Of a stretch of DNA of 64,000 nucleotides, positions 13,324 to 26,805 are shown one piece after another. Below the pieces are notes generated by a model that had not been told where the DNA came from, did not search any database, and worked only from the letters and a program-made list of their open reading frames with translations. Numbering within the stretch: the stretch's first letter is position 1; each line of letters starts with the position of its first letter. The position numbers and the translations under genes are program-made. The stretch lies in the NCBI GenBank assembly GCA_020536535.1, contig JAHLWZ010000151.1:1-64000 (forward strand), given 5' to 3'. This DNA is from Pelomyxa schiedti. Lineage: Eukaryota > Protista > Evosea.

Positions 13324-16300
13324 ATGGGCAACTCTGTCGCACCACAGATAGGCATCAACAACGTAGCCGATCTCCCCGACGTTGTTCTACCCCCCAAAAT
13401 AATACATGCGCCGCTTCCCAAAAATGCTCCCTTACCAGATGCCGAGCCCCATGCCGCTACCACTTCTAGTGCCGACGCGCCGCCGACGCAGCTTACCCCG
13501 ATGGAAAGTGCGCTCGCGACGGTCGGCGACCTCACGCTGTACCCAAAGGTCCAGCCCTTCCCGCCCGTCGCCCTTATCGGCGCCAGCGTCAAGTTGCCCG
13601 AAGTCAACGGGTGGGACGACGCCTGGGCCGTTTTCTCGCAGGGACTCGACGTGATGACCCGCTGGCGCTCCGACGACCCCCTCCTCGTCTGCTCTCGCGG
13701 CTTCATCGACACGGCCGAGGAGTACGACTACAAGTTCTTCGGGGTCAAGCACCCCAGGCTGGAGGACCCGCAGTCGTTCGTTACCAAGGAGCTCATATGG
13801 AACGCGCTCGAGGACGCCGGATACTCCCCGTCGATGCTGGCCGCGATGCCCGGGAGGGTTGGATTGTACGGCGACCTGAACCCCTTCTACTCGTTCGACA
13901 TGATGTCCCACGTCATGAAGTCGATGGACGACTTTGCCGTTATGACTCCGCACCTGCTTTTCTCTTCTACTTATACCGTCCCTTTCAAAATCCTCGTAGG
14001 CATTGCCAACGGCATAAAAATGCACGGGCCCGTTCTTCACATATCAAGCGCTTGCAGCACTTCTGCAGCTTGTATGTTGGCAGCTTGTGATGCTCTCCAT
14101 GCTGGTCGTATTGAGATGGGTATTGCCTCTGCGGCTACTATGGCACACCCTCGCCACCCAATCACCGGGTACAGCAAAGAATCAAAGGGCCTGTACAGTG
14201 TGGATGGATATATAAGGCCTTTCGAAGCCAGGGCCTCGGGCTTTGTTCCATCAGAGGGAGGCGCTGTGTTGGTCCTGAAGACCCTTGAGGCTGCCGTACG
14301 CGACAATGACGTAATACATGCTGTGATCGATGGTGTGGGTATCTGCTCCGATCCGTCTGTTTTGCCCTCGCCAGACGCAATAAGTGCAACTCTGGTTGCC
14401 AAGGGTATACTCGAGGCAATGAGGACTGCTGGAGTGAAGAGCAGTGATGAGATAGGGTATGTGGAGTGCCATGGGTCAGCTACAACAGTTGGTGATTTTT
14501 CTGAGATAGTTGCACTTCGTGCTGCATTGCAACATCCAAACAAGTCGCGGTTCTGTGCTCTTGGAGGAAGTAAAGCCAACGTCGGTCACTTGGGTGGATG
14601 TCCTGGCCTAGTGTCCATCATCAAAGCAGCCCTCGTTTTCAAACACAACTTCATCCCACCTCTAGCAAACTTTGAGAATCCTAGCCCTATCGCTGACCAT
14701 ATACTCAAGCAGCCAGGGTGCCCTGTGTTCCTGCCCAAGGTCGGTCACACACCTGCAACCCCCGTTACCAAAATAGGTGTTCAGTGTTCTGGGCCTGGAG
14801 GTGGTTACCACTGGATCCTTTCCAAACCTCCTTCAATGCCCGCTTTCGTGGAATCTGCCGTTTCACGCAGGACTTTCCTTTTATGCACTTCGGCCAAGAC
14901 TTCCACTGCCAATGCCACTCTATCTGAAAATACAACCAATCTCATCTGTGAGAAGCTTCAACAGCCAGGTGGACTTGAGTTTGCAGTTAATGCAGAGTAC
15001 ACTCTTCAAACACGAAGGGAATGCTTCCTTGAAAGGAGTTCCGTGGTTGTAAATCTTTCTTCAGGTAGAAATTATAACTTGTTTACCCAACAAGAGAAAT
15101 TATTATCACTCACCCAACTTTCTTCTCCCATTTTAGATGCCTCTTCCCAACCAGTTGTTCGGCCCTTGCCTGCCGTAAGGAACAGTATCGCCAACCAAAG
15201 TGCTGACGTGAGGGTTGCTTTTGTGTTCTCTGGATTTGGAATCTGCAGTCGTCTTGCGGCTAAGGAGCTTTACCATCAATACCCCGTTTATAGGGAAACT
15301 TTTGATAGGTGCAGCAAGTGCGTACAAGAACTTACGCAGGGAGACCGGAACCTCGTTTTATCAGCAGACGATCTTGCTGTCGACTCGGCAGAAGACATTA
15401 ATGTCGGTGCCCTAGTCTTTGTGACCCTTCAGCTGTGCCTTTCACAACTTCTACTTTCATGGGGCATCGAGCCAGCTTACGGAATGGTTTGCCACAGCCT
15501 TGGAGAATATGCCTGCGCTGTCACAGCTGGAATGTTGACCATTGAAGAGTGCCTAAAACTCACCAAGCTTCGTTTCGCCCTTCTTACAAAGCTGCCAACG
15601 GTTACAGCAGTGGTTGTATCGATGGTAGTTGTGAAGAGAGTATGCGACCTTGTGGCCGAGATTAACAAGTTGGACGATCCCTCTTCCAGTGATCAAATTG
15701 AAGTGACTGTGATGAATAGTCCCACCACTTGCCTTGTAGTAGGATCGCAAGCAAAGGTGGATGCCTTACTCTTGAAGCTTAAGGGAACCGCCTGCAAGAC
15801 TACTGTCTTCGCACCAACTCCCTCTCACTCAAAAAGAGTTACTCCAGTGCTGTCACAATTCCGAGATGCCTTCCTTGGAATGAACATCCCCGTTCGCTCA
15901 GGGAAGTACAGATTTATAAGTTCTCTGAACGCTGATTGGGGGAACATTGAGGATATGGCCTCACCAGACCATTTCTGTGAAGCTTTGACCCACCCTGTCC
16001 TCTTCCACCAAGCCATGCAAAAATTACTCAGCACTTGGATATCGGAGGGTGCCGGCCAAGATCCCCAGAAGGCGAGAAAAATGGTTATATTTGAAATTGG
16101 ATCCAGCTTATCCACCCACATTCAAGATATATCAACTGCTGAATGTGCCAAAGTTCCCAGAAACCAACCAGCAGCCTCTGTGTTGGCACTTCCCCTGTTC
16201 TTGCACCATCGCAATAGCGCGCTCGACGCCGCTCAACACCTGTGTGTGCAACTTGGAACTTCCTGGGTGCATGGAGCCAAGTTTAACTGGACAACGTATT

Positions 16301-16752
16301 CCGAATCTGCGGGAGGGGCTCGACGTCATGTCGTGCCATTGTGCCTATATCCCTATGAGAGAGTAAAAACCACCTTCGACATCCCAAGTGAGCCGTTGTC
16401 TAGAGATGCATTCTTTGAGAAGCTTATGGAAATGCCTCAGCCCAGGTCTGCTCCAGTGCACGAGACAACACCAACGACAGTGGAAGTTCCAGTAGTATCG
16501 GGCTCCACTCTTTCACCCAAAGATGTGGGAGTAATTGCGGAAAAGTGGGCACTTTTCCTTCACACCACGCCCAAGACAGAGGATGACAACTTCTTTGAGT
16601 TTGGAGCAACAAGCCTTACAGCCATGCAAATGATTGCCTCGATCAACAGGGTTCTTGGGCTAACGTTTCAGTCTGTGACCTTCTTTGGGGTTGAACCCAC
16701 TTTTGGTAACCTTGTCCGTGGCTACTCCCAACACAAAGCCTCACGCACGTAG
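13324..16752 (+). CDS. Intronless type I PKS module KS-AT-ACP (1142 aa)
   Basis: KS: DPQ...ALEDAGY, SSACSTS (Cys), ECHGSAT (His), KANVGHL (His). AT: AFVFSGFG, CHSLGEY, PSHS. ACP: FFEFGATSL. No KR, DH or TE. Confidence 0.93.
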   Translation: MGNSVAPQIGINNVADLPDVVLPPKIIHAPLPKNAPLPDAEPHAATTSSADAPPTQLTPMESALATVGDLTLYPKVQPFPPVALIGASVKLPEVNGWDDAWAVFSQGLDVMTRWRSDDPLLVCSRGFIDTAEEYDYKFFGVKHPRLEDPQSFVTKELIWNALEDAGYSPSMLAAMPGRVGLYGDLNPFYSFDMMSHVMKSMDDFAVMTPHLLFSSTYTVPFKILVGIANGIKMHGPVLHISSACSTSAACMLAACDALHAGRIEMGIASAATMAHPRHPITGYSKESKGLYSVDGYIRPFEARASGFVPSEGGAVLVLKTLEAAVRDNDVIHAVIDGVGICSDPSVLPSPDAISATLVAKGILEAMRTAGVKSSDEIGYVECHGSATTVGDFSEIVALRAALQHPNKSRFCALGGSKANVGHLGGCPGLVSIIKAALVFKHNFIPPLANFENPSPIADHILKQPGCPVFLPKVGHTPATPVTKIGVQCSGPGGGYHWILSKPPSMPAFVESAVSRRTFLLCTSAKTSTANATLSENTTNLICEKLQQPGGLEFAVNAEYTLQTRRECFLERSSVVVNLSSGRNYNLFTQQEKLLSLTQLSSPILDASSQPVVRPLPAVRNSIANQSADVRVAFVFSGFGICSRLAAKELYHQYPVYRETFDRCSKCVQELTQGDRNLVLSADDLAVDSAEDINVGALVFVTLQLCLSQLLLSWGIEPAYGMVCHSLGEYACAVTAGMLTIEECLKLTKLRFALLTKLPTVTAVVVSMVVVKRVCDLVAEINKLDDPSSSDQIEVTVMNSPTTCLVVGSQAKVDALLLKLKGTACKTTVFAPTPSHSKRVTPVLSQFRDAFLGMNIPVRSGKYRFISSLNADWGNIEDMASPDHFCEALTHPVLFHQAMQKLLSTWISEGAGQDPQKARKMVIFEIGSSLSTHIQDISTAECAKVPRNQPAASVLALPLFLHHRNSALDAAQHLCVQLGTSWVHGAKFNWTTYSESAGGARRHVVPLCLYPYERVKTTFDIPSEPLSRDAFFEKLMEMPQPRSAPVHETTPTTVEVPVVSGSTLSPKDVGVIAEKWALFLHTTPKTEDDNFFEFGATSLTAMQMIASINRVLGLTFQSVTFFGVEPTFGNLVRGYSQHKASRT

Positions 16753-21822: not shown

Positions 21823-23958
21823 ATGGGAGACAAGAGAGGCGACAGCGAGAACCAAGAACGGGAGGCAGCGTCGTCACGCAAGAGGACGCCTGGGAAATTC
21901 CCCAGGGAGCTGCAGTACCTCGTGGACGACGACAGTCTGCTGGAGGACCCCCCATCCGTGGACTGGAAGCGCCGCGGCGACGGCGGTGCCGCCGCAACCG
22001 CAACCGGCGCCACCACCCCAGACGCCGCGGCCGAGAAGGTCGACGGGGCCGAGAGCCGGCAGGGTGCCACGACGACGGCCTCGGGGGAGGCCAAGAGGCG
22101 CAGGGTGGGGAGGGAGGGGAACGAGGGGGAGGAAAGGGCGGTGGCGGGGGCGGGAAGGGGGGACAGGGGGAGGGAGAGGGGCAGCAGGGGAGCGGGAAGG
22201 GGCGGCAGAGGGGGGGCGGGGGGCGCCGGGAGGGCCCAGAACAGCGGGCAACAGAAGAGGGTCACTTTCGCTGCTAGGGAGAGGGAGGAGTTCTTGGCCG
22301 AGCAGAAGAAGAGGGTCGTGGATGTATGTAGTGTCGCATTCTTCCGTAGTAACCAAAGTATTATAATTAAATGGAAGCAGTAATTCAATTCAACTACATC
22401 CATGTCAGAATAGAGAATTTAGCATGTGATGTAACCCATTGCGGAATGTAACTCGTGTCATTGACTTCGAAACTAAAGGGTGAAGCTGAGAACGACTTTG
22501 ATGAGGAAAAGAAGTCTACAGAGCCACTCACTCATGTGAAGGGAGAGGAGGCATCAACAATATCTTATGATGGTGACATCAAGATAGAGCCCTTTAATTT
22601 AAGGTAGCTTCATACCTCCTCACTATTACAAATTGTGACTCAACACCAGACAGGAGATGCAGGAAGGAAGTTTTGATGGTCAAGGAAACTACACAGAGTT
22701 TAGGCAGCCAAGGTACGTCGTAACATTTTCTTCTTGTAAATTAATAACTTCTCCCAGAGCACTAAGTGATGCATGGCTAGAAGAATGTGACTCAAAATAT
22801 GCTGAAGTGCGCATACTTTTTTAAAATAGTGTTTTGTTGTGTTTGTATGTATTGTGTACCAAGAAGTTTCTATTTACTTCTGTGGACAGGACATGGAACG
22901 TGAAGCAGAAGAACTGGAAAGGAAATGGCGAGCAAAAGCGAAAGCAGACAGAATGGCAAAGGCTGAAAAGAGAGAAGCAATTGACACTTATGCCTGCCGT
23001 GCTAGTATGTTGCAGCTTCTTCTTCCTGGTGAGGATACCTGGGGTGCTCTAAAGCGCCTTGGCAAGGTAGTTGCTACATCTTTTTTCTGACTTCAATTAT
23101 ACTTCAGCATAAAATAATATTTTCTGCAGAAAGATGGAGGTGACAAGGCGAAGTTCCTCAAGTTAACAGAAGCTGCTGATGCCCTACTAGCATCTGGTGA
23201 TATAAGTTTGTTTCCCCACATCCTTCATCTAAGTAGACTAGTAATAATACAAGTACAACATAAAAAAAAAAAACCAAGAATCTCAAATAAAATAAACCAA
23301 CCCAAACCACCCTTCACACAGATATATACACAATGAACCGGGATCAAATCAGAGCGGCGGCAGCAGCCGAACTTTGTATGTACACTTCCTCCACCAAAAA
23401 AAGCTAAAAACCTGACCACTTACACAAGTGCACGAGACCCAAGACGTGGCCAAAGTTGTAGACGACTCAAGTGAAGACCCAATAACAGAAGCCGACCTAG
23501 TCCCGCGAACAACATCCTCGACAGCTACATCTACATCAACATCCACATCAACCTCAGCACCTTCCACAAAGCCAAAGGGGTCATCAACATGGAGCAATGT
23601 GGCGAAGAACAGCAAGGGCAGTTCTAAGAGTACTAGTAGTAGCAATGCACGGGAGGAGGAGAGTGAGGGCTCTGTGGTGAAAGCGAAAAAGCCGGAAGTG
23701 ATGTGGGAGTACCAAATAAGTGGCAATGATCAAGTGCAGGGGCCATTTACAACAGCGCAGATGATGGAGTGGGTACAAGCGGTATGTTATGTTAAATCCT
23801 CAATGTGCTTACATGTTATTATTTACCAACACAAATAGGGCTGCTTCAGCTATGCTGATTCTCCTGCGGTTAAGGCTAGAATTGTTGGGGAAACACTGTA
23901 TGAATCACACCACGCCTATCAACCAATCCTTGAGATAAAATTCTCAGAGTACTTGTAA
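21823..23958 (+). CDS. CD2BP2: CD2BP2/LIN1 (U5 snRNP 52K) with C-terminal GYF domain, spliced
   Basis: KIEPFNL, EMQEGSFDGQGNY, DAWLE, LLPGEDTWGALKRLG, LTEAADALL, MWEYQ...QGPFTTAQMMEWVQAGCF. Confidence 0.88.
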
Positions 23959-24026: not shown

Positions 24027-26805
24027 TTACAGGTGAATGAGATTTTCCGGTGATAACATTTCCGCCATGGAACGAGCCAAGGGCACAGGAACAGCGTTCT
24101 GGGTTGGTGGTCAGAAGAAAACATACCACCGCCACGCCTACCGCGATTTGTTGCATTTGTGCACTTGGTGAACCGAAGAAATACCACGAATCACCAAACC
24201 CTTGTGCTCTCGCATTCTTTTGAAAGGTCATAGTGAAGAGAGATAAGAGAAACATACTTCCCGAATAGAAAAAGTCCTGTTTGTGTGCGGGTGCAAGCAG
24301 GTCCCTTGTGGCGCTCCTGTAACTGTCAAAAATACTTCCTTCCAGCCACGGTGATAGCAACGGAAATTCTTTCTGTCACGAGGCGGTCTTCTATACTGCC
24401 GATAACTTAGTGGAAGAGTACCATCCTTCTGCAGGGGAACATCAAGTAAAGGCTGGATTGGGAAATCAAAATTTACACAAAAGAATCATCACTTACGTGT
24501 TGTGAAAGTACGGTTACGCTACGGTGTAATGTGACTGTGGTGTCTGTTTCCATTCGCATCATTGCTTGATAAGTGGACTGACAAGAGTGGGCATACTCTA
24601 CGCCACCTTCATCCACTGTATCCTCAGCAAGGTCTATGCCCCAACCCTCGTTGATTTCATACTCGGTGTTTGTGTGTCAAACCTGAAATTGCATCCCAAA
24701 CTGTTAGCGGCAATGGAAGGTTTGAATTTACAGGCGGTTTTACAAACCTGGAATGATTTAGATAAAAATTTCTATTTGTATGTGTACTTGCGGAATTTTG
24801 TCTTGCAGAAATTAGGTGCGCTGCAGCCTGTAGGTAACGTGTACTGTGCTGTCGGGAATTTCGGTAAATATATGTCACTTCTGGAGGCCCAGATAAAGGT
24901 GCGCCATCTTGACTGCGGTGCTCCAAAACAACAAGCATTTAGTAAACCAGTTCTGACTTGATATCCCAAAGACACCAAGTTTGATATCAGATACCGCACC
25001 AGGAAAGCATCATTAGGATCAAAAATCCCTGGCACATTCTCAAAGAGCACTACCTCGGGGTGCAATAGTTTTATGTATTTCGCGAATATACGCATCATTT
25101 GGTTGTCTTTATTAAGCAGAGGTCTTATAAGCTCTCGACAGCAGTTGCTCTTGCTCACCCCTTGGCAAGGGGGTCCTCCAATAAGAATTGTGACTTCTCC
25201 AGGGAGAGGTATACAAGGAAGGGCAGAACTGTCAACAGGAGCTTCATATGAGTCCTTCGAATTCTCCTCCATTTCACCTGAGAAGTTGCTATAACGGGAA
25301 CGAAGGAACTCGGAAAGCTCGTCAGCAGAGAGTTCAGCTGGTGCAACCCAGGAGTCAAAAAGGGGGGAAAGTCCTATCCAAGAAACAAGAAACTGCAACG
25401 AGTTCGGTGTGAAGAAGCACAGATCTCTAACATAGGCTATTTGATCATTCTCATTATCATGGTCACGCTCTTCCTCTACACAACTATTGTCCTCAGTGAC
25501 TTAGTTCTGTTAGAATTAAAATGAGTGTAATCAGATGTACTTCTGGGGGGTTTGTGTTGTTTAATCAGCTCTTCTAAAGATAGCAAGAGGGCTTTGGCAC
25601 ATCCTTGAATTGGTATGACATCAGTGTGATTTCGGATGTAAGTCTTCATTGTGTCAGGGTTCTTTTCGACGCCCCATGTAATAGGAAATCCTGCCTACAC
25701 TTAGGTAAACTTGTTGAATAGAGGTTCAATATTCGAGGTTCAATATTCACACTTGCTCAAAACCATGACTAAGTCCACCACACCCACAAAATAGATCCAA
25801 AATGCGGGGTGCCCGAGTGATATCTCTCATATCAGCATTAGGTGGATTGGTGTAGCTGCAGCTATAAAGAAAGTTAAAGGAAAAAGTACAAAAAAAGCGC
25901 CGCACTCTTTACTGTTGTACTCAAGCCTATAAAAATAATGGTTTTTTTGTGCAACCCAATTACGGAATTCGACTCCTTCTGTAGAGGGAAAATATTTAAC
26001 CTAACCTGGAATGTCAACACCATTTGCGTCTGAGGGAGAACCTTACCCAGCATTTGGTTGTGACGCGTGTTGTCTCATAACAGCCAAATGATTTAGGGTC
26101 CTCGCAACTACCCATGTACAATTCACGCTTTTGGTTATGAGGACCCTTACAAAAGGTGTATCTTGGGAACCACAGCCGTCTTATCTTTAGCGGGCAGTCT
26201 CGTTGTGTCTCAGATTTTCCTATAATCTGTCCTACCCACAAAATCCCTCTTCCAGTTTTGCGCGATTTGGTGTGGCCCCGAAATTTGACGAAGTCTTCTA
26301 TAGCATACTGACTCTGCTTGCATCCGGCCTTTTCTGAGCTAGTGTGTGTCTCAACTTGTATTGGTGCAGTAAGTATATTCGTAGTATCGAGTGTCTGGTT
26401 CTGGGGTGCCTCAAAATTCGCTTGGTGCTGGGATTGGAGGGGCTCGTGTATCGACTTGGGAGCTTGGATCTGCTCTACTTGGCCTGCGAAGGGCGCACTG
26501 GGATTTTCAGCACTTCCACCGTTATTCTGCATAGTATAGCTCTCAACTGCAACCGTTTCCTCCGGCCGACAGTTGGCGTGGGTGTCGTCATTCGACGCGA
26601 CTTCGGCGGGGATTTGCTCGGGTGTCTGGGTTATTTCGCCAGGATCGTCGATCACGATGACGTCGTGCGGATCTGGTCTCTGGTTTACGTGTGTCGCCGG
26701 ATCTTCGTCGTCATCGCTGATTACAACTACTTCACCCCTACGAGGCAGGTGTCGATGTGTCCACCATTTCCGTATATTGTCGCTTGTGCGGTTTCTACGC
26801 CACAT
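24027..26805 (-). CDS. Chromomethylase-like C5 DNA methyltransferase: BAH domain plus MTase domain with inserted chromodomain, spliced
   Basis: Motif I ILDLFCGCGG, IV GGPPCQGVS, VI FENV, VIII QSRWR, IX FSIRENARAQGF, X QIANAVP. BAH-like segment YAIEDFV...LWVGQI...RELY...YFYRLEY. Chromo-like segment LQFLVSWIG...DSWVAPAEL at 25300-25445. Confidence 0.88.

What the first reader, a model, noticed from the sequence alone, without database searches (positions are those of the whole stretch)
24027..26805. Chromomethylase (CMT)-type DNA methyltransferase in an amoebozoan-like genome
Seen: the spliced product has a BAH domain followed by a C5-MTase with an intact catalytic PCQ motif. Between motifs I and IV sits a chromodomain-like segment (QIAYVRDLCFFTPNSLQFLVSWIGLSPLFDSWVAPAELSADELSEFL), followed by IPLPGEVTILIGGPPCQG. 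The segments R..xRPL...NQM, FLVRYL...GYQVRTG and SIRENAR look more like CMT3/ZMET2 than MET1/DNMT1 (RECAR). Established: a chromodomain inserted in the catalytic domain defines CMTs, which are known mainly from green plants and algae as H3K9me-guided non-CG methylases. Dictyostelium and Entamoeba have only DNMT2. Inference: this is either an ancient CMT lineage retained outside plants or a lateral transfer, implying a histone-coupled DNA methylation system not yet described in this lineage. Its many host-style introns and host flanking genes argue against contamination.
Basis: partly seen in the sequence, partly recalled or inferred. Interest (0 to 1): 0.88.

Follow-up and report, generated by a model that had tools for sequence, protein, structure and literature searches.

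The report
Chromomethylase-like DNA methyltransferase in Pelomyxa
The anaerobic amoeba Pelomyxa schiedti has an intact, spliced gene for a DNA cytosine methyltransferase laid out like a plant chromomethylase, but it belongs to an amoeba-specific branch and its chromodomain has lost most residues that read methylated histone.

Summary
Window 24027-26805 (minus strand) is a 10-exon gene, GenBank KAH3766369.1 "CMT-type DNA-methyltransferase [Pelomyxa schiedti]". It encodes a C5 DNA methyltransferase with all catalytic motifs intact. A chromodomain sits between motifs III and IV, at the same loop as in plant CMTs, and a BAH-like domain lies upstream.

The insert fails Pfam's Chromo threshold (E 0.14). 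A profile of the archamoebal inserts matches CMT chromodomains (hhalign 96.5%, E 1e-9) and HP1 (E 2e-8). An AlphaFold model folds it as three strands plus a helix. Only one of the three aromatic-cage positions is aromatic.

The nearest solved structure is ZMET2. Even so, ML trees place the gene in an Archamoebae clade (Pelomyxa x3, Mastigamoeba) outside the plant/haptophyte CMT clade. An AU test does not reject a sister relationship (p 0.345).

Single-cell RNA contigs confirm five introns. The public model omits a conserved 95-nt exon 2, so the corrected protein is 788 aa, not 760.

The genome also carries DNMT1-like and UHRF1-like genes. No methylation data exist.

This scan already noted a paralogue on another contig of this genome. 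Verdict: a real, moderately novel variant, and not plant contamination or transfer.

The parts
24027..26805 (-). Whole coding region: 10 exons, 2364 nt plus stop, corrected product 788 aa
   Evidence: Every exon except exon 2 translates to a substring of public protein P0001 = KAH3766369.1.
26047..26805 (-). Exon 1: acidic, low-complexity N-terminus with two V/I-rich runs followed by acidic residues, then the first part of the BAH-like domain (about 26313-26047)
   Evidence: The profile of archamoebal N-termini hits the BAH of SHL (5znp) at E 0.005.
25906..26000 (-). Exon 2, missing from the public gene model: the C-terminal BAH strands
   Evidence: Flanked by GT..AG introns 26046-26001 (46 nt) and 25905-25856 (50 nt). 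It is 53% identical to Mastigamoeba P0005 residues 192-221 (E 2e-10) and 58% identical to paralogue P0002 (E 3e-13). Paralogue L003 has an intron at the same position and phase. No RNA contig covers it.
25753..25855 (-). Exon 3, holding motif I (LDLFCGCGG, 25800-25774)
25541..25694 (-). Exon 4: motifs II-III and the helix that precedes the insert
24788..25499 (-). Exon 5: chromodomain insert plus motifs IV (GGPPCQG, 25179-25159), VI (ENV, 25041-25033) and VIII (QSRWR, 24915-24901)
25273..25443 (-). Chromodomain insert (protein residues about 362-418 in P0001 numbering): three strands plus a helix, with cage positions Q/D, W, L
   Evidence: Pfam Chromo E 0.14. hhalign against CMT chromodomains gives 96.5%, E 1e-9. 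The profile hits HP1/CBX5 at E 2e-8. The AF2 model has strands at model residues 109-119, 122-129 and 138-140 and a helix at 147-164, with pLDDT 65-90.
24683..24747 (-). Exon 6 (the TVWDAIS part of the DAISDL motif)
   Evidence: Both flanking introns, 24787-24748 and 24682-24634, are confirmed by RNA contigs.
24497..24633 (-). Exon 7 (target-recognition region)
24258..24452 (-). Exon 8, ending in SIRE (motif IX, first half)
   Evidence: Introns 24496-24453 and 24257-24217 are confirmed by RNA contigs.
24142..24216 (-). Exon 9: NARAQGFGD (motif IX, with P to G in this copy) and QQIA
24027..24098 (-). Exon 10: motif X (A-NAVP, with G to A in this copy), C-terminus and stop
   Evidence: Intron 24141-24099 is confirmed by an RNA contig.

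Best explanation
This is a nuclear, transcribed Pelomyxa schiedti gene for a DNA cytosine-5 methyltransferase of the eukaryotic DNMT1/CMT superfamily. It is one of three paralogues in the genome and belongs to a clade shared with Mastigamoeba balamuthi and probably Mastigella eilhardi.

The domain order is: disordered acidic N-terminus, BAH-like domain, methyltransferase motifs I-III, chromodomain, motifs IV-X. The chromodomain sits at the same surface loop as in plant chromomethylases.

Shown here: the gene structure, splicing of the 3' half, intact catalytic residues, homology and fold of the insert, and placement outside the plant/haptophyte CMT clade.

Inferred: the protein is an active DNA methyltransferase that is positioned on chromatin by its BAH and chromodomain modules. 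It would add a second methylation activity beside the DNMT1-like/UHRF1-like maintenance pair that the genome also encodes.

In this copy two of the three methyl-lysine cage positions are non-aromatic, yet the insert stays as conserved among paralogues as the rest of the protein. The chromodomain therefore most likely serves as a structural or otherwise-specific docking module, not a canonical H3K9me reader. The Mastigamoeba orthologue keeps a full Y-W-Y cage and may still read methyl-lysine.

Whether the chromodomain insertion is shared with plant CMTs by descent or arose independently is unresolved. The trees lean towards independent origin.
For: Identity and organism:
- P0001 is 100% identical to exon 5 and is GenBank KAH3766369.1 from Pelomyxa schiedti.

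Catalytic integrity:
- 51 of the 60 columns conserved in at least 85% of 100 homologues carry the consensus residue. These include motif I, PCQ Cys454, ENV, QxRxR and RE..R.Q.

Chromodomain:
- The insertion site is the same as in CMTs.

BAH:
-, plus Pfam BAH at E 4e-6 in orthologue P0005.

Nearest structures:
- ZMET2, then MET1, then DNMT1, then DIM-2, then bacterial enzymes.

Phylogeny:
- The Archamoebae clade has 97/91 support and the CMT clade has 100/100 support without it.
- The bacterial rows fall on one side of a branch.
- The motif IV-X tree gives a 13-row group at SH-aLRT 95 with more chromodomain-bearing proteins of unidentified eukaryotes.

Expression and host origin:
- Five spliced junctions are seen in single-cell RNA contigs.
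- Two genome-run contigs match the window exactly, with no indels.

Genomic context:
- Paralogues lie on contigs C829 and C902.
- A DNMT1-like gene lies on C1048.
- A UBL-PHD-SRA gene lies on C1026.
Against: - Pfam's own Chromo and BAH models do not reach threshold on this protein.
- The hhalign match of the BAH region to CMT BAH domains is weak (15%, E 0.0017).
- Three copy-specific changes fall at positions conserved in at least 91% of homologues: DLP to DLA, GFPD to GFGD, and GNAV to ANAV in motif X. These could reduce activity.
- No RNA contig covers exons 2-4.
- There are no 5mC data for Pelomyxa.
- Pre-SET and DNMT1-RFD searches of the genome were blank but had no positive control.
- The AF2 model rests on an alignment rich in CMTs, which may pull it towards ZMET2.
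Confidence: 0.75

Rival explanations
1. True chromomethylase by descent. The Archamoebae clade is the sister of plant/haptophyte CMTs, and the chromodomain insertion happened once, in an early eukaryote.
For: - The insertion site is the same and the flanking motif is similar (LPLPG.V..GGPPCQG).
- ZMET2 is the best sequence and fold match.
- The AU test does not reject Archamoebae + CMT as one clade (delta lnL 5.15, p 0.345).
Against: - The best ML trees (FastTree, and quick and careful IQ-TREE) never join the two groups.
- The archamoebal chromodomain profile finds HP1-type chromodomains in the PDB but not ZMET2's, even at E up to 10.
- Mastigella and the tremellomycete fungal rows in the same broad group lack the insert.
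Confidence: 0.25
2. Recent lateral transfer of a plant or algal CMT into Pelomyxa, or plant or algal contamination of the assembly.
For: The highest-scoring named database hits are plant CMTs.
Against: - The gene is not nested in the CMT clade.
- Identity to plant CMTs is only 25-30%.
- Relatives occur in three archamoebal genera, and Pelomyxa has three paralogues that share at least one intron position.
- The nine short introns match those of the flanking host gene, and the gene lies on a 95-kb contig among ordinary eukaryotic genes.
Confidence: 0.03
3. Catalytically dead or decaying paralogue that serves as a regulatory or scaffold protein, or a young pseudogene.
For: - Three substitutions unique to this copy fall at highly conserved positions, including the motif X glycine.
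- The chromodomain cage is degenerate.
- A second Mastigamoeba relative, P0060, shows no PCQ motif in the extracted insert region.
Against: - The reading frame is open across all 10 exons.
- The catalytic Cys, ENV, QxRxR and the SAM-binding motif I are intact.
- The gene is transcribed and correctly spliced.
- The insert is as conserved among paralogues (45-49% identity) as the whole protein (52-56%).
Confidence: 0.12

Closest known systems
Plant chromomethylases (ZMET2 / CMT3 / CMT2; PDB 4FSX, 7UBU, 9MVY)
   Same: - The domain order is N-terminal BAH, then a C5-methyltransferase with a chromodomain at the loop between motif III and motif IV.
- ZMET2 is the best PDB match by sequence (E 8.6e-31) and by fold (E 4e-36, TM 0.69).
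   Different: - The gene falls outside the CMT clade in ML trees.
- The chromodomain cage is Q/D-W-L, against F441-W466-Y469 in ZMET2. The W and Y positions were read from the ZMET2 alignment. F441 is from my recollection of Du et al. 2012.
- About 35 extra residues lie between the chromodomain helix and motif IV.
- The organism is an anaerobic amoebozoan.
Haptophyte and Telonema 'CMT-like' DNMTs (PMC12344493)
   Same: They are non-plant eukaryotic DNMTs with CMT affinity. The Emiliania (P0102) and Diacronema (P0043) proteins were included in my trees.
   Different: Those proteins group with plant CMTs at 100/100 support. The archamoebal proteins do not.
DNMT1 / MET1
   Same: They belong to the same superfamily and have a BAH domain in front of the catalytic domain. 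Table S1 of PMC12344493 counts four Mastigamoeba DNMTs under DNMT1.
   Different: Pfam finds no RFD or CXXC domain on this protein, and there is one BAH-like domain instead of two. DNMT1 and MET1 have no chromodomain insert. A separate DNMT1-like gene exists in this genome on C1048.
Neurospora DIM-2 (PDB 9BAP/9BAQ)
   Same: It is a BAH-bearing DNMT1-superfamily enzyme coupled to H3K9me.
   Different: DIM-2 reaches H3K9me3 through HP1, not through a chromodomain of its own. It is a much weaker match (E about 4e-11 by sequence; 2e-20 by fold).

Membership tests
Chromomethylase (CMT) | C5 DNA methyltransferase domain with motifs I-X, including the catalytic PCQ | tested here: met
   Pfam PF00145 scores E 4.2e-48. 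Conserved residues were checked column by column.
Chromomethylase (CMT) | Chromodomain embedded in the catalytic domain, upstream of motif IV | tested here: met
   The insert is at the same alignment site as the plant CMT chromodomain. hhalign gives 96.5%, E 1e-9. The profile hits HP1 chromodomains at E 2e-8. AF2 gives a three-strand-plus-helix fold. Pfam Chromo alone fails: E 0.14, 12.5 bits against a 25.1-bit cut-off.
Chromomethylase (CMT) | N-terminal BAH domain | tested here: inconclusive
   Pfam BAH gives no hit on this protein. The Mastigamoeba orthologue scores 27.1 bits, below the 30.8-bit cut-off. The clade profile hits the SHL BAH (5znp) at E 0.005. hhalign against CMT BAH domains gives only 15%. 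The joined exon 1 + exon 2 sequence was not searched.
Chromomethylase (CMT) | Aromatic cage in the chromodomain that binds H3K9me2 | tested here: not met
   Only the central Trp is kept, and the other two positions are Q/D and L. The paralogues read W-W-K and L-W-S. Mastigamoeba reads Y-W-Y.
Chromomethylase (CMT) | Phylogenetic placement within the CMT clade | tested here: not met
   The CMT clade has 100/100 support without it, and the gene sits in an Archamoebae clade with 97/91 support. A sister relationship is not rejected (AU p 0.345).
Chromomethylase (CMT) | Non-CG (CHG/CHH) methylation activity dependent on H3K9 methylation | not testable with these tools
   No methylome or biochemical data are available.
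DNMT1 / MET1 | Replication-foci targeting domain (PF12047) and tandem BAH domains | tested here: not met
   Pfam on P0001 finds only DNA_methylase. A genome-wide PF12047 search was blank but had no positive control.
Archamoebae BAH-chromo-MTase clade (unnamed) | Monophyly with Pelomyxa paralogues and Mastigamoeba P0005, plus the shared VKYF..FYR.xYN BAH block and insert | tested here: met

The most novel reading that the evidence does not exclude
The layout 'BAH, then a chromodomain inside the catalytic domain' is not a plant invention. It could be an ancient eukaryotic DNMT form, retained in Archamoebae, in several unidentified microbial eukaryotes (P0003, P0004/7/8, P0032) and in the plant/haptophyte CMTs. 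Histone-mark-guided DNA methylation by a single polypeptide would then date back to near the root of eukaryotes.
Probability: 0.25. Interest if true: 0.8.

Novelty: new variant of a known kind. Interest (0 to 1): 0.55.

Why it matters
Chromomethylases are treated as a green-lineage speciality, and recent surveys describe the chromodomain as a plant CMT addition (PMC12344493).

A separate amoebozoan clade with the same insertion at the same loop has two possible meanings. The loop may be a recurrent docking point for chromatin readers, which would be convergence. Or the design may be far older than plants.

It also marks Archamoebae as likely users of 5mC, because a DNMT1-like and a UHRF1-like gene are present as well. 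Entamoeba, which has only DNMT2, has shaped the view of this group. Mastigamoeba balamuthi is a candidate organism for experimental tests.

On the practical side, the public gene model lacks a conserved exon and should be corrected.

Tried and rejected
- I first read exon 2 in the wrong frame and suspected frameshifts or homopolymer errors. This was rejected: canonical introns 26046-26001 and 25905-25856 restore the conserved frame, and contigs from two genome runs match the window without indels.
- Single-sequence AlphaFold of residues 255-760 gave an unusable model (pLDDT 32.6). It was repeated with a 100-sequence alignment.
- Pfam on single exons and on the public protein found neither BAH nor Chromo.
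- The search for homologous proteins returned a mix of plant CMTs and bacterial Dcm-type enzymes. It did not list the Mastigamoeba orthologue or a product of the third paralogue (C829).
- A bacterial origin was considered because bacterial 420-aa enzymes score as well as plant CMTs and FastTree weakly joined them to the clade (support 77). Under the mixture model the bacterial rows fall on one side of a branch (58/60), so there is no support for this.
- Genome searches for Pre-SET and DNMT1-RFD were blank but had no positive control.
- A paper search for Mastigamoeba + DNMT1 + methylation found nothing. A search for Mastigamoeba balamuthi + DNA methyltransferase found only an unrelated helminth paper.
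Exons were searched by reference, and the public 760-aa protein, which lacks exon 2, stood in for the full length.
Full report
**Observation**

The region 24027-26805 holds a minus-strand gene. Three-frame reading and a check of each splice site give ten exons and nine GT..AG introns of 40-58 nt. The coding sequence is 2364 nt plus a TAA stop at 24029-24027.

Pfam's C-5 cytosine methylase model scores E 3.8e-21 on exon 5 alone and 4.2e-48 on the public protein, so this is not a chance resemblance.

**Identity and gene model**

A HMMER scan of 1.84 billion representatives returned a 760-aa protein that is 100% identical to exon 5 (P0001). The cluster look-up names it KAH3766369.1, "CMT-type DNA-methyltransferase [Pelomyxa schiedti]". 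The organism is therefore an anaerobic archamoeba, and the gene already carries a CMT-type name in GenBank.

All my exons translate to substrings of P0001 except exon 2 (26000-25906), which the public model skips. Several results support that exon:
- It is bounded by canonical introns.
- It is 53% identical to Mastigamoeba balamuthi P0005 (E 2e-10).
- It is 58% identical to paralogue P0002 (E 3e-13).
- It aligns to a block conserved in all relatives.
- Its downstream intron has the same position and phase as in paralogue L003.

Exons were used by reference, and P0001 stood in for the full length.

**Expression and host origin**

One study holds both the genome runs and the single-cell RNA-seq runs. 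RNA contigs laid on the window show five spliced junctions that match my introns 5 to 9. One 668-nt contig spans exons 5-9, and a separate piece lies in exon 1. The intron of the neighbouring plus-strand gene is spliced in the same libraries.

Contigs from two genome runs match the window with no substitutions or indels, so the odd-looking T-run near exon 2 is real. No RNA contig covers exons 2-4.

**Catalytic domain**

I aligned 100 homologues (A5) and looked at the 60 columns conserved in at least 85% of them. This protein carries the consensus residue at 51 of these columns. They include:
- motif I (D..G.G)
- GGPPCQG with the catalytic Cys
- ENV
- Q.R.R
- RE..R.Q
- N-A-V of motif X

Three differences are unique to this copy:
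- DLP to DLA
- GFPD to GFGD
- GNAV to ANAV

The enzyme is probably active, but this is an inference.

**The insert**

Pfam Chromo scores only E 0.14 on exon 5 and finds nothing on the whole protein. Other evidence shows that the insert is a chromodomain:
- A four-sequence profile of the archamoebal inserts (three Pelomyxa paralogues plus Mastigamoeba, A3) matches an alignment of plant CMT chromodomains with hhalign probability 96.5%, E 1e-9.
- The same profile finds HP1/CBX chromodomains in the PDB at E 2e-8 and dozens of other chromodomains.
- An AlphaFold2 model built on alignment A5 (mean pLDDT 84.8, pTM 0.84) folds the insert as three β-strands and a C-terminal helix, with pLDDT 65-90.
- In alignment A5 the insert occupies the same site as the plant CMT chromodomain, after the helix that follows motif III and before LPLPG.V..GGPPCQG. 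MET1/DNMT1 and bacterial enzymes have only a short linker there.

It is, however, a degenerate chromodomain. Counting back from the conserved Trp without gaps against HP1, and using the ZMET2 alignment, the three cage positions read as follows:

| Protein | Cage positions |
|---|---|
| This gene | Q/D-W-L |
| Paralogue on C829 | W-W-K |
| Paralogue on C902 | L-W-S |
| Mastigamoeba | Y-W-Y |

The insert is nevertheless as conserved among the paralogues (45-49% identity) as the rest of the protein, so it is under constraint.

**BAH**

Pfam finds no BAH in this protein. The Mastigamoeba orthologue scores 27.1 bits, just below the cut-off. A profile of the archamoebal N-terminal regions has a single PDB hit, the BAH domain of Arabidopsis SHL (5znp) at E 0.005, and that alignment runs through the exon 2 block. 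hhalign against CMT BAH domains is weak (15%). I regard the BAH as likely but not proven for this copy.

**Relationships**

By sequence, exon 5 matches:
- ZMET2 at E 8.6e-31
- Arabidopsis MET1 at 6e-18
- animal DNMT1 at about 1e-12
- DIM-2 at about 4e-11

By fold the order is the same: 4e-36, 6e-29, 2e-26 and 2e-20, with bacterial enzymes at 1e-18.

Trees of the catalytic domain with the insert removed tell a different story. The careful IQ-TREE run (LG+C20 PMSF, 52 rows, 405 columns) gives:
- Pelomyxa P0001 + P0002 at 100/99
- plus Mastigamoeba P0005 at 96/80
- plus an unidentified eukaryote, P0003, at 97/91
- a CMT clade at 100/100 without them, holding land plants, Chlorokybus, Emiliania and Diacronema/Picocystis (names)
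- a DNMT1 clade at 98/93

The backbone is weak. All bacterial rows fall on one side of a branch (58/60). This is compatible with a single eukaryotic superfamily in which the Archamoebae group branches deeply. An AU test does not reject Archamoebae + CMT as one clade (delta lnL 5.15, p 0.345).

A tree of motifs IV-X alone gives a 13-row group at SH-aLRT 95 (names). Its members, beside the Pelomyxa pair, are:
- Mastigamoeba P0005 and P0060
- Mastigella P0078, which lacks the insert
- two tremellomycete fungal proteins
- several proteins from metagenomes or unidentified eukaryotes that carry a chromodomain before motif IV (P0003, P0004/7/8, P0032)

The contigs of P0003 and P0153 carry eukaryotic neighbour genes.

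**Genome context**

The genome has three paralogues of this gene, on contigs C151, C829 and C902. Three further features bear on a 5mC system:
- A fourth C5-methyltransferase on C1048 best matches animal DNMT1 (E 2e-27) and has its own BAH-like segment and motif I.
- At least five loci carry SRA domains. One, on C1026, has ubiquitin-like, PHD and SRA parts in a row, as in UHRF1.
- A chromo-shadow match is marginal.

Pre-SET and RFD searches were blank without a positive control. This argues for a 5mC system in Pelomyxa but does not show one.

**Literature**

PMC12344493 describes CMT as a plant paralogue of DNMT1 whose chromodomain was added in plants, and mentions CMT-like DNMTs in haptophytes. 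Its Table S1 scores Mastigamoeba balamuthi as DNMT1 = 4, CMT = 0.

I found no paper describing chromodomain-bearing DNMTs in Archamoebae. My results agree with it.

**Verdict**

The gene works like, and is built like, a chromomethylase, but it is not shown to be a member of the CMT clade, and this copy lacks the chromodomain cage that defines H3K9me-guided targeting.

It is best filed as a lineage-specific DNMT1-superfamily enzyme with CMT-like architecture. The layout is either convergent with plant CMTs or very ancient. Plant contamination and recent transfer are unlikely. The finding is of moderate interest and would rise if methylomes or binding assays show histone-guided non-CG methylation in Archamoebae.

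Noticed in passing
window 25906-26000 (minus strand): The public GenBank model KAH3766369.1 omits a conserved 95-nt exon that encodes the end of the BAH domain. The model of paralogue KAH3744754.1 likewise drops 23 residues of the BAH core that are continuous in the genomic ORF (L003, frame 1).
   Followed up: yes
window 26640-26740 (minus strand; protein residues about 25-60): Two short V/I-rich runs followed by acidic residues (VVVISDDDED, VIVIDDP) resemble SUMO-interaction motifs, by my recollection of the consensus. Similar runs occur in paralogue P0002 (IVIISDGD, IVISDDS).
   Followed up: no
G000 contig C1048:11181-12555 (L007): A separate DNMT1-like methyltransferase gene. It has a BAH-like segment, motif I, ENV and QSRRR, and its best PDB matches are human and mouse DNMT1 at E 2e-27.
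   Followed up: partly
G000 contig C1026:3107-6508 (L009): Ubiquitin-like, PHD and SRA domains lie in a row on one strand, as in UHRF1. At least four more SRA-domain loci exist (C496, C23, C1088, C492).
   Followed up: partly
window 23428-23938 (plus strand) and 27100 onward (plus strand): The flanking host genes are a GYF-domain-like protein with a 57-nt GT..AG intron confirmed by RNA contigs, and an STE20/MST-like protein kinase. Both names come from my reading of the translations. No family search was run on them.
   Followed up: no
L016 (Logan SRR24962750 contig) and L017 (ENA metagenome scaffold): Unidentified microbial eukaryotes encode related methyltransferases with one or two bona fide chromodomains before motif IV. 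P0003 is intronless and has tandem chromodomains. This suggests that the layout is wider than Archamoebae.
   Followed up: partly
P0060 (Mastigamoeba balamuthi EP00727_P006930): A second Mastigamoeba relative in the same broad group. The stretch extracted before and into the start of its C-terminal methyltransferase match shows no PCQ motif, so it may be a catalytically dead paralogue.
   Followed up: no
window 13324-16752: The scan's notes list an intronless, divergent KS-AT-ACP (polyketide/fatty-acid synthase-like) ORF on the same window. I did not examine it.
   Followed up: no
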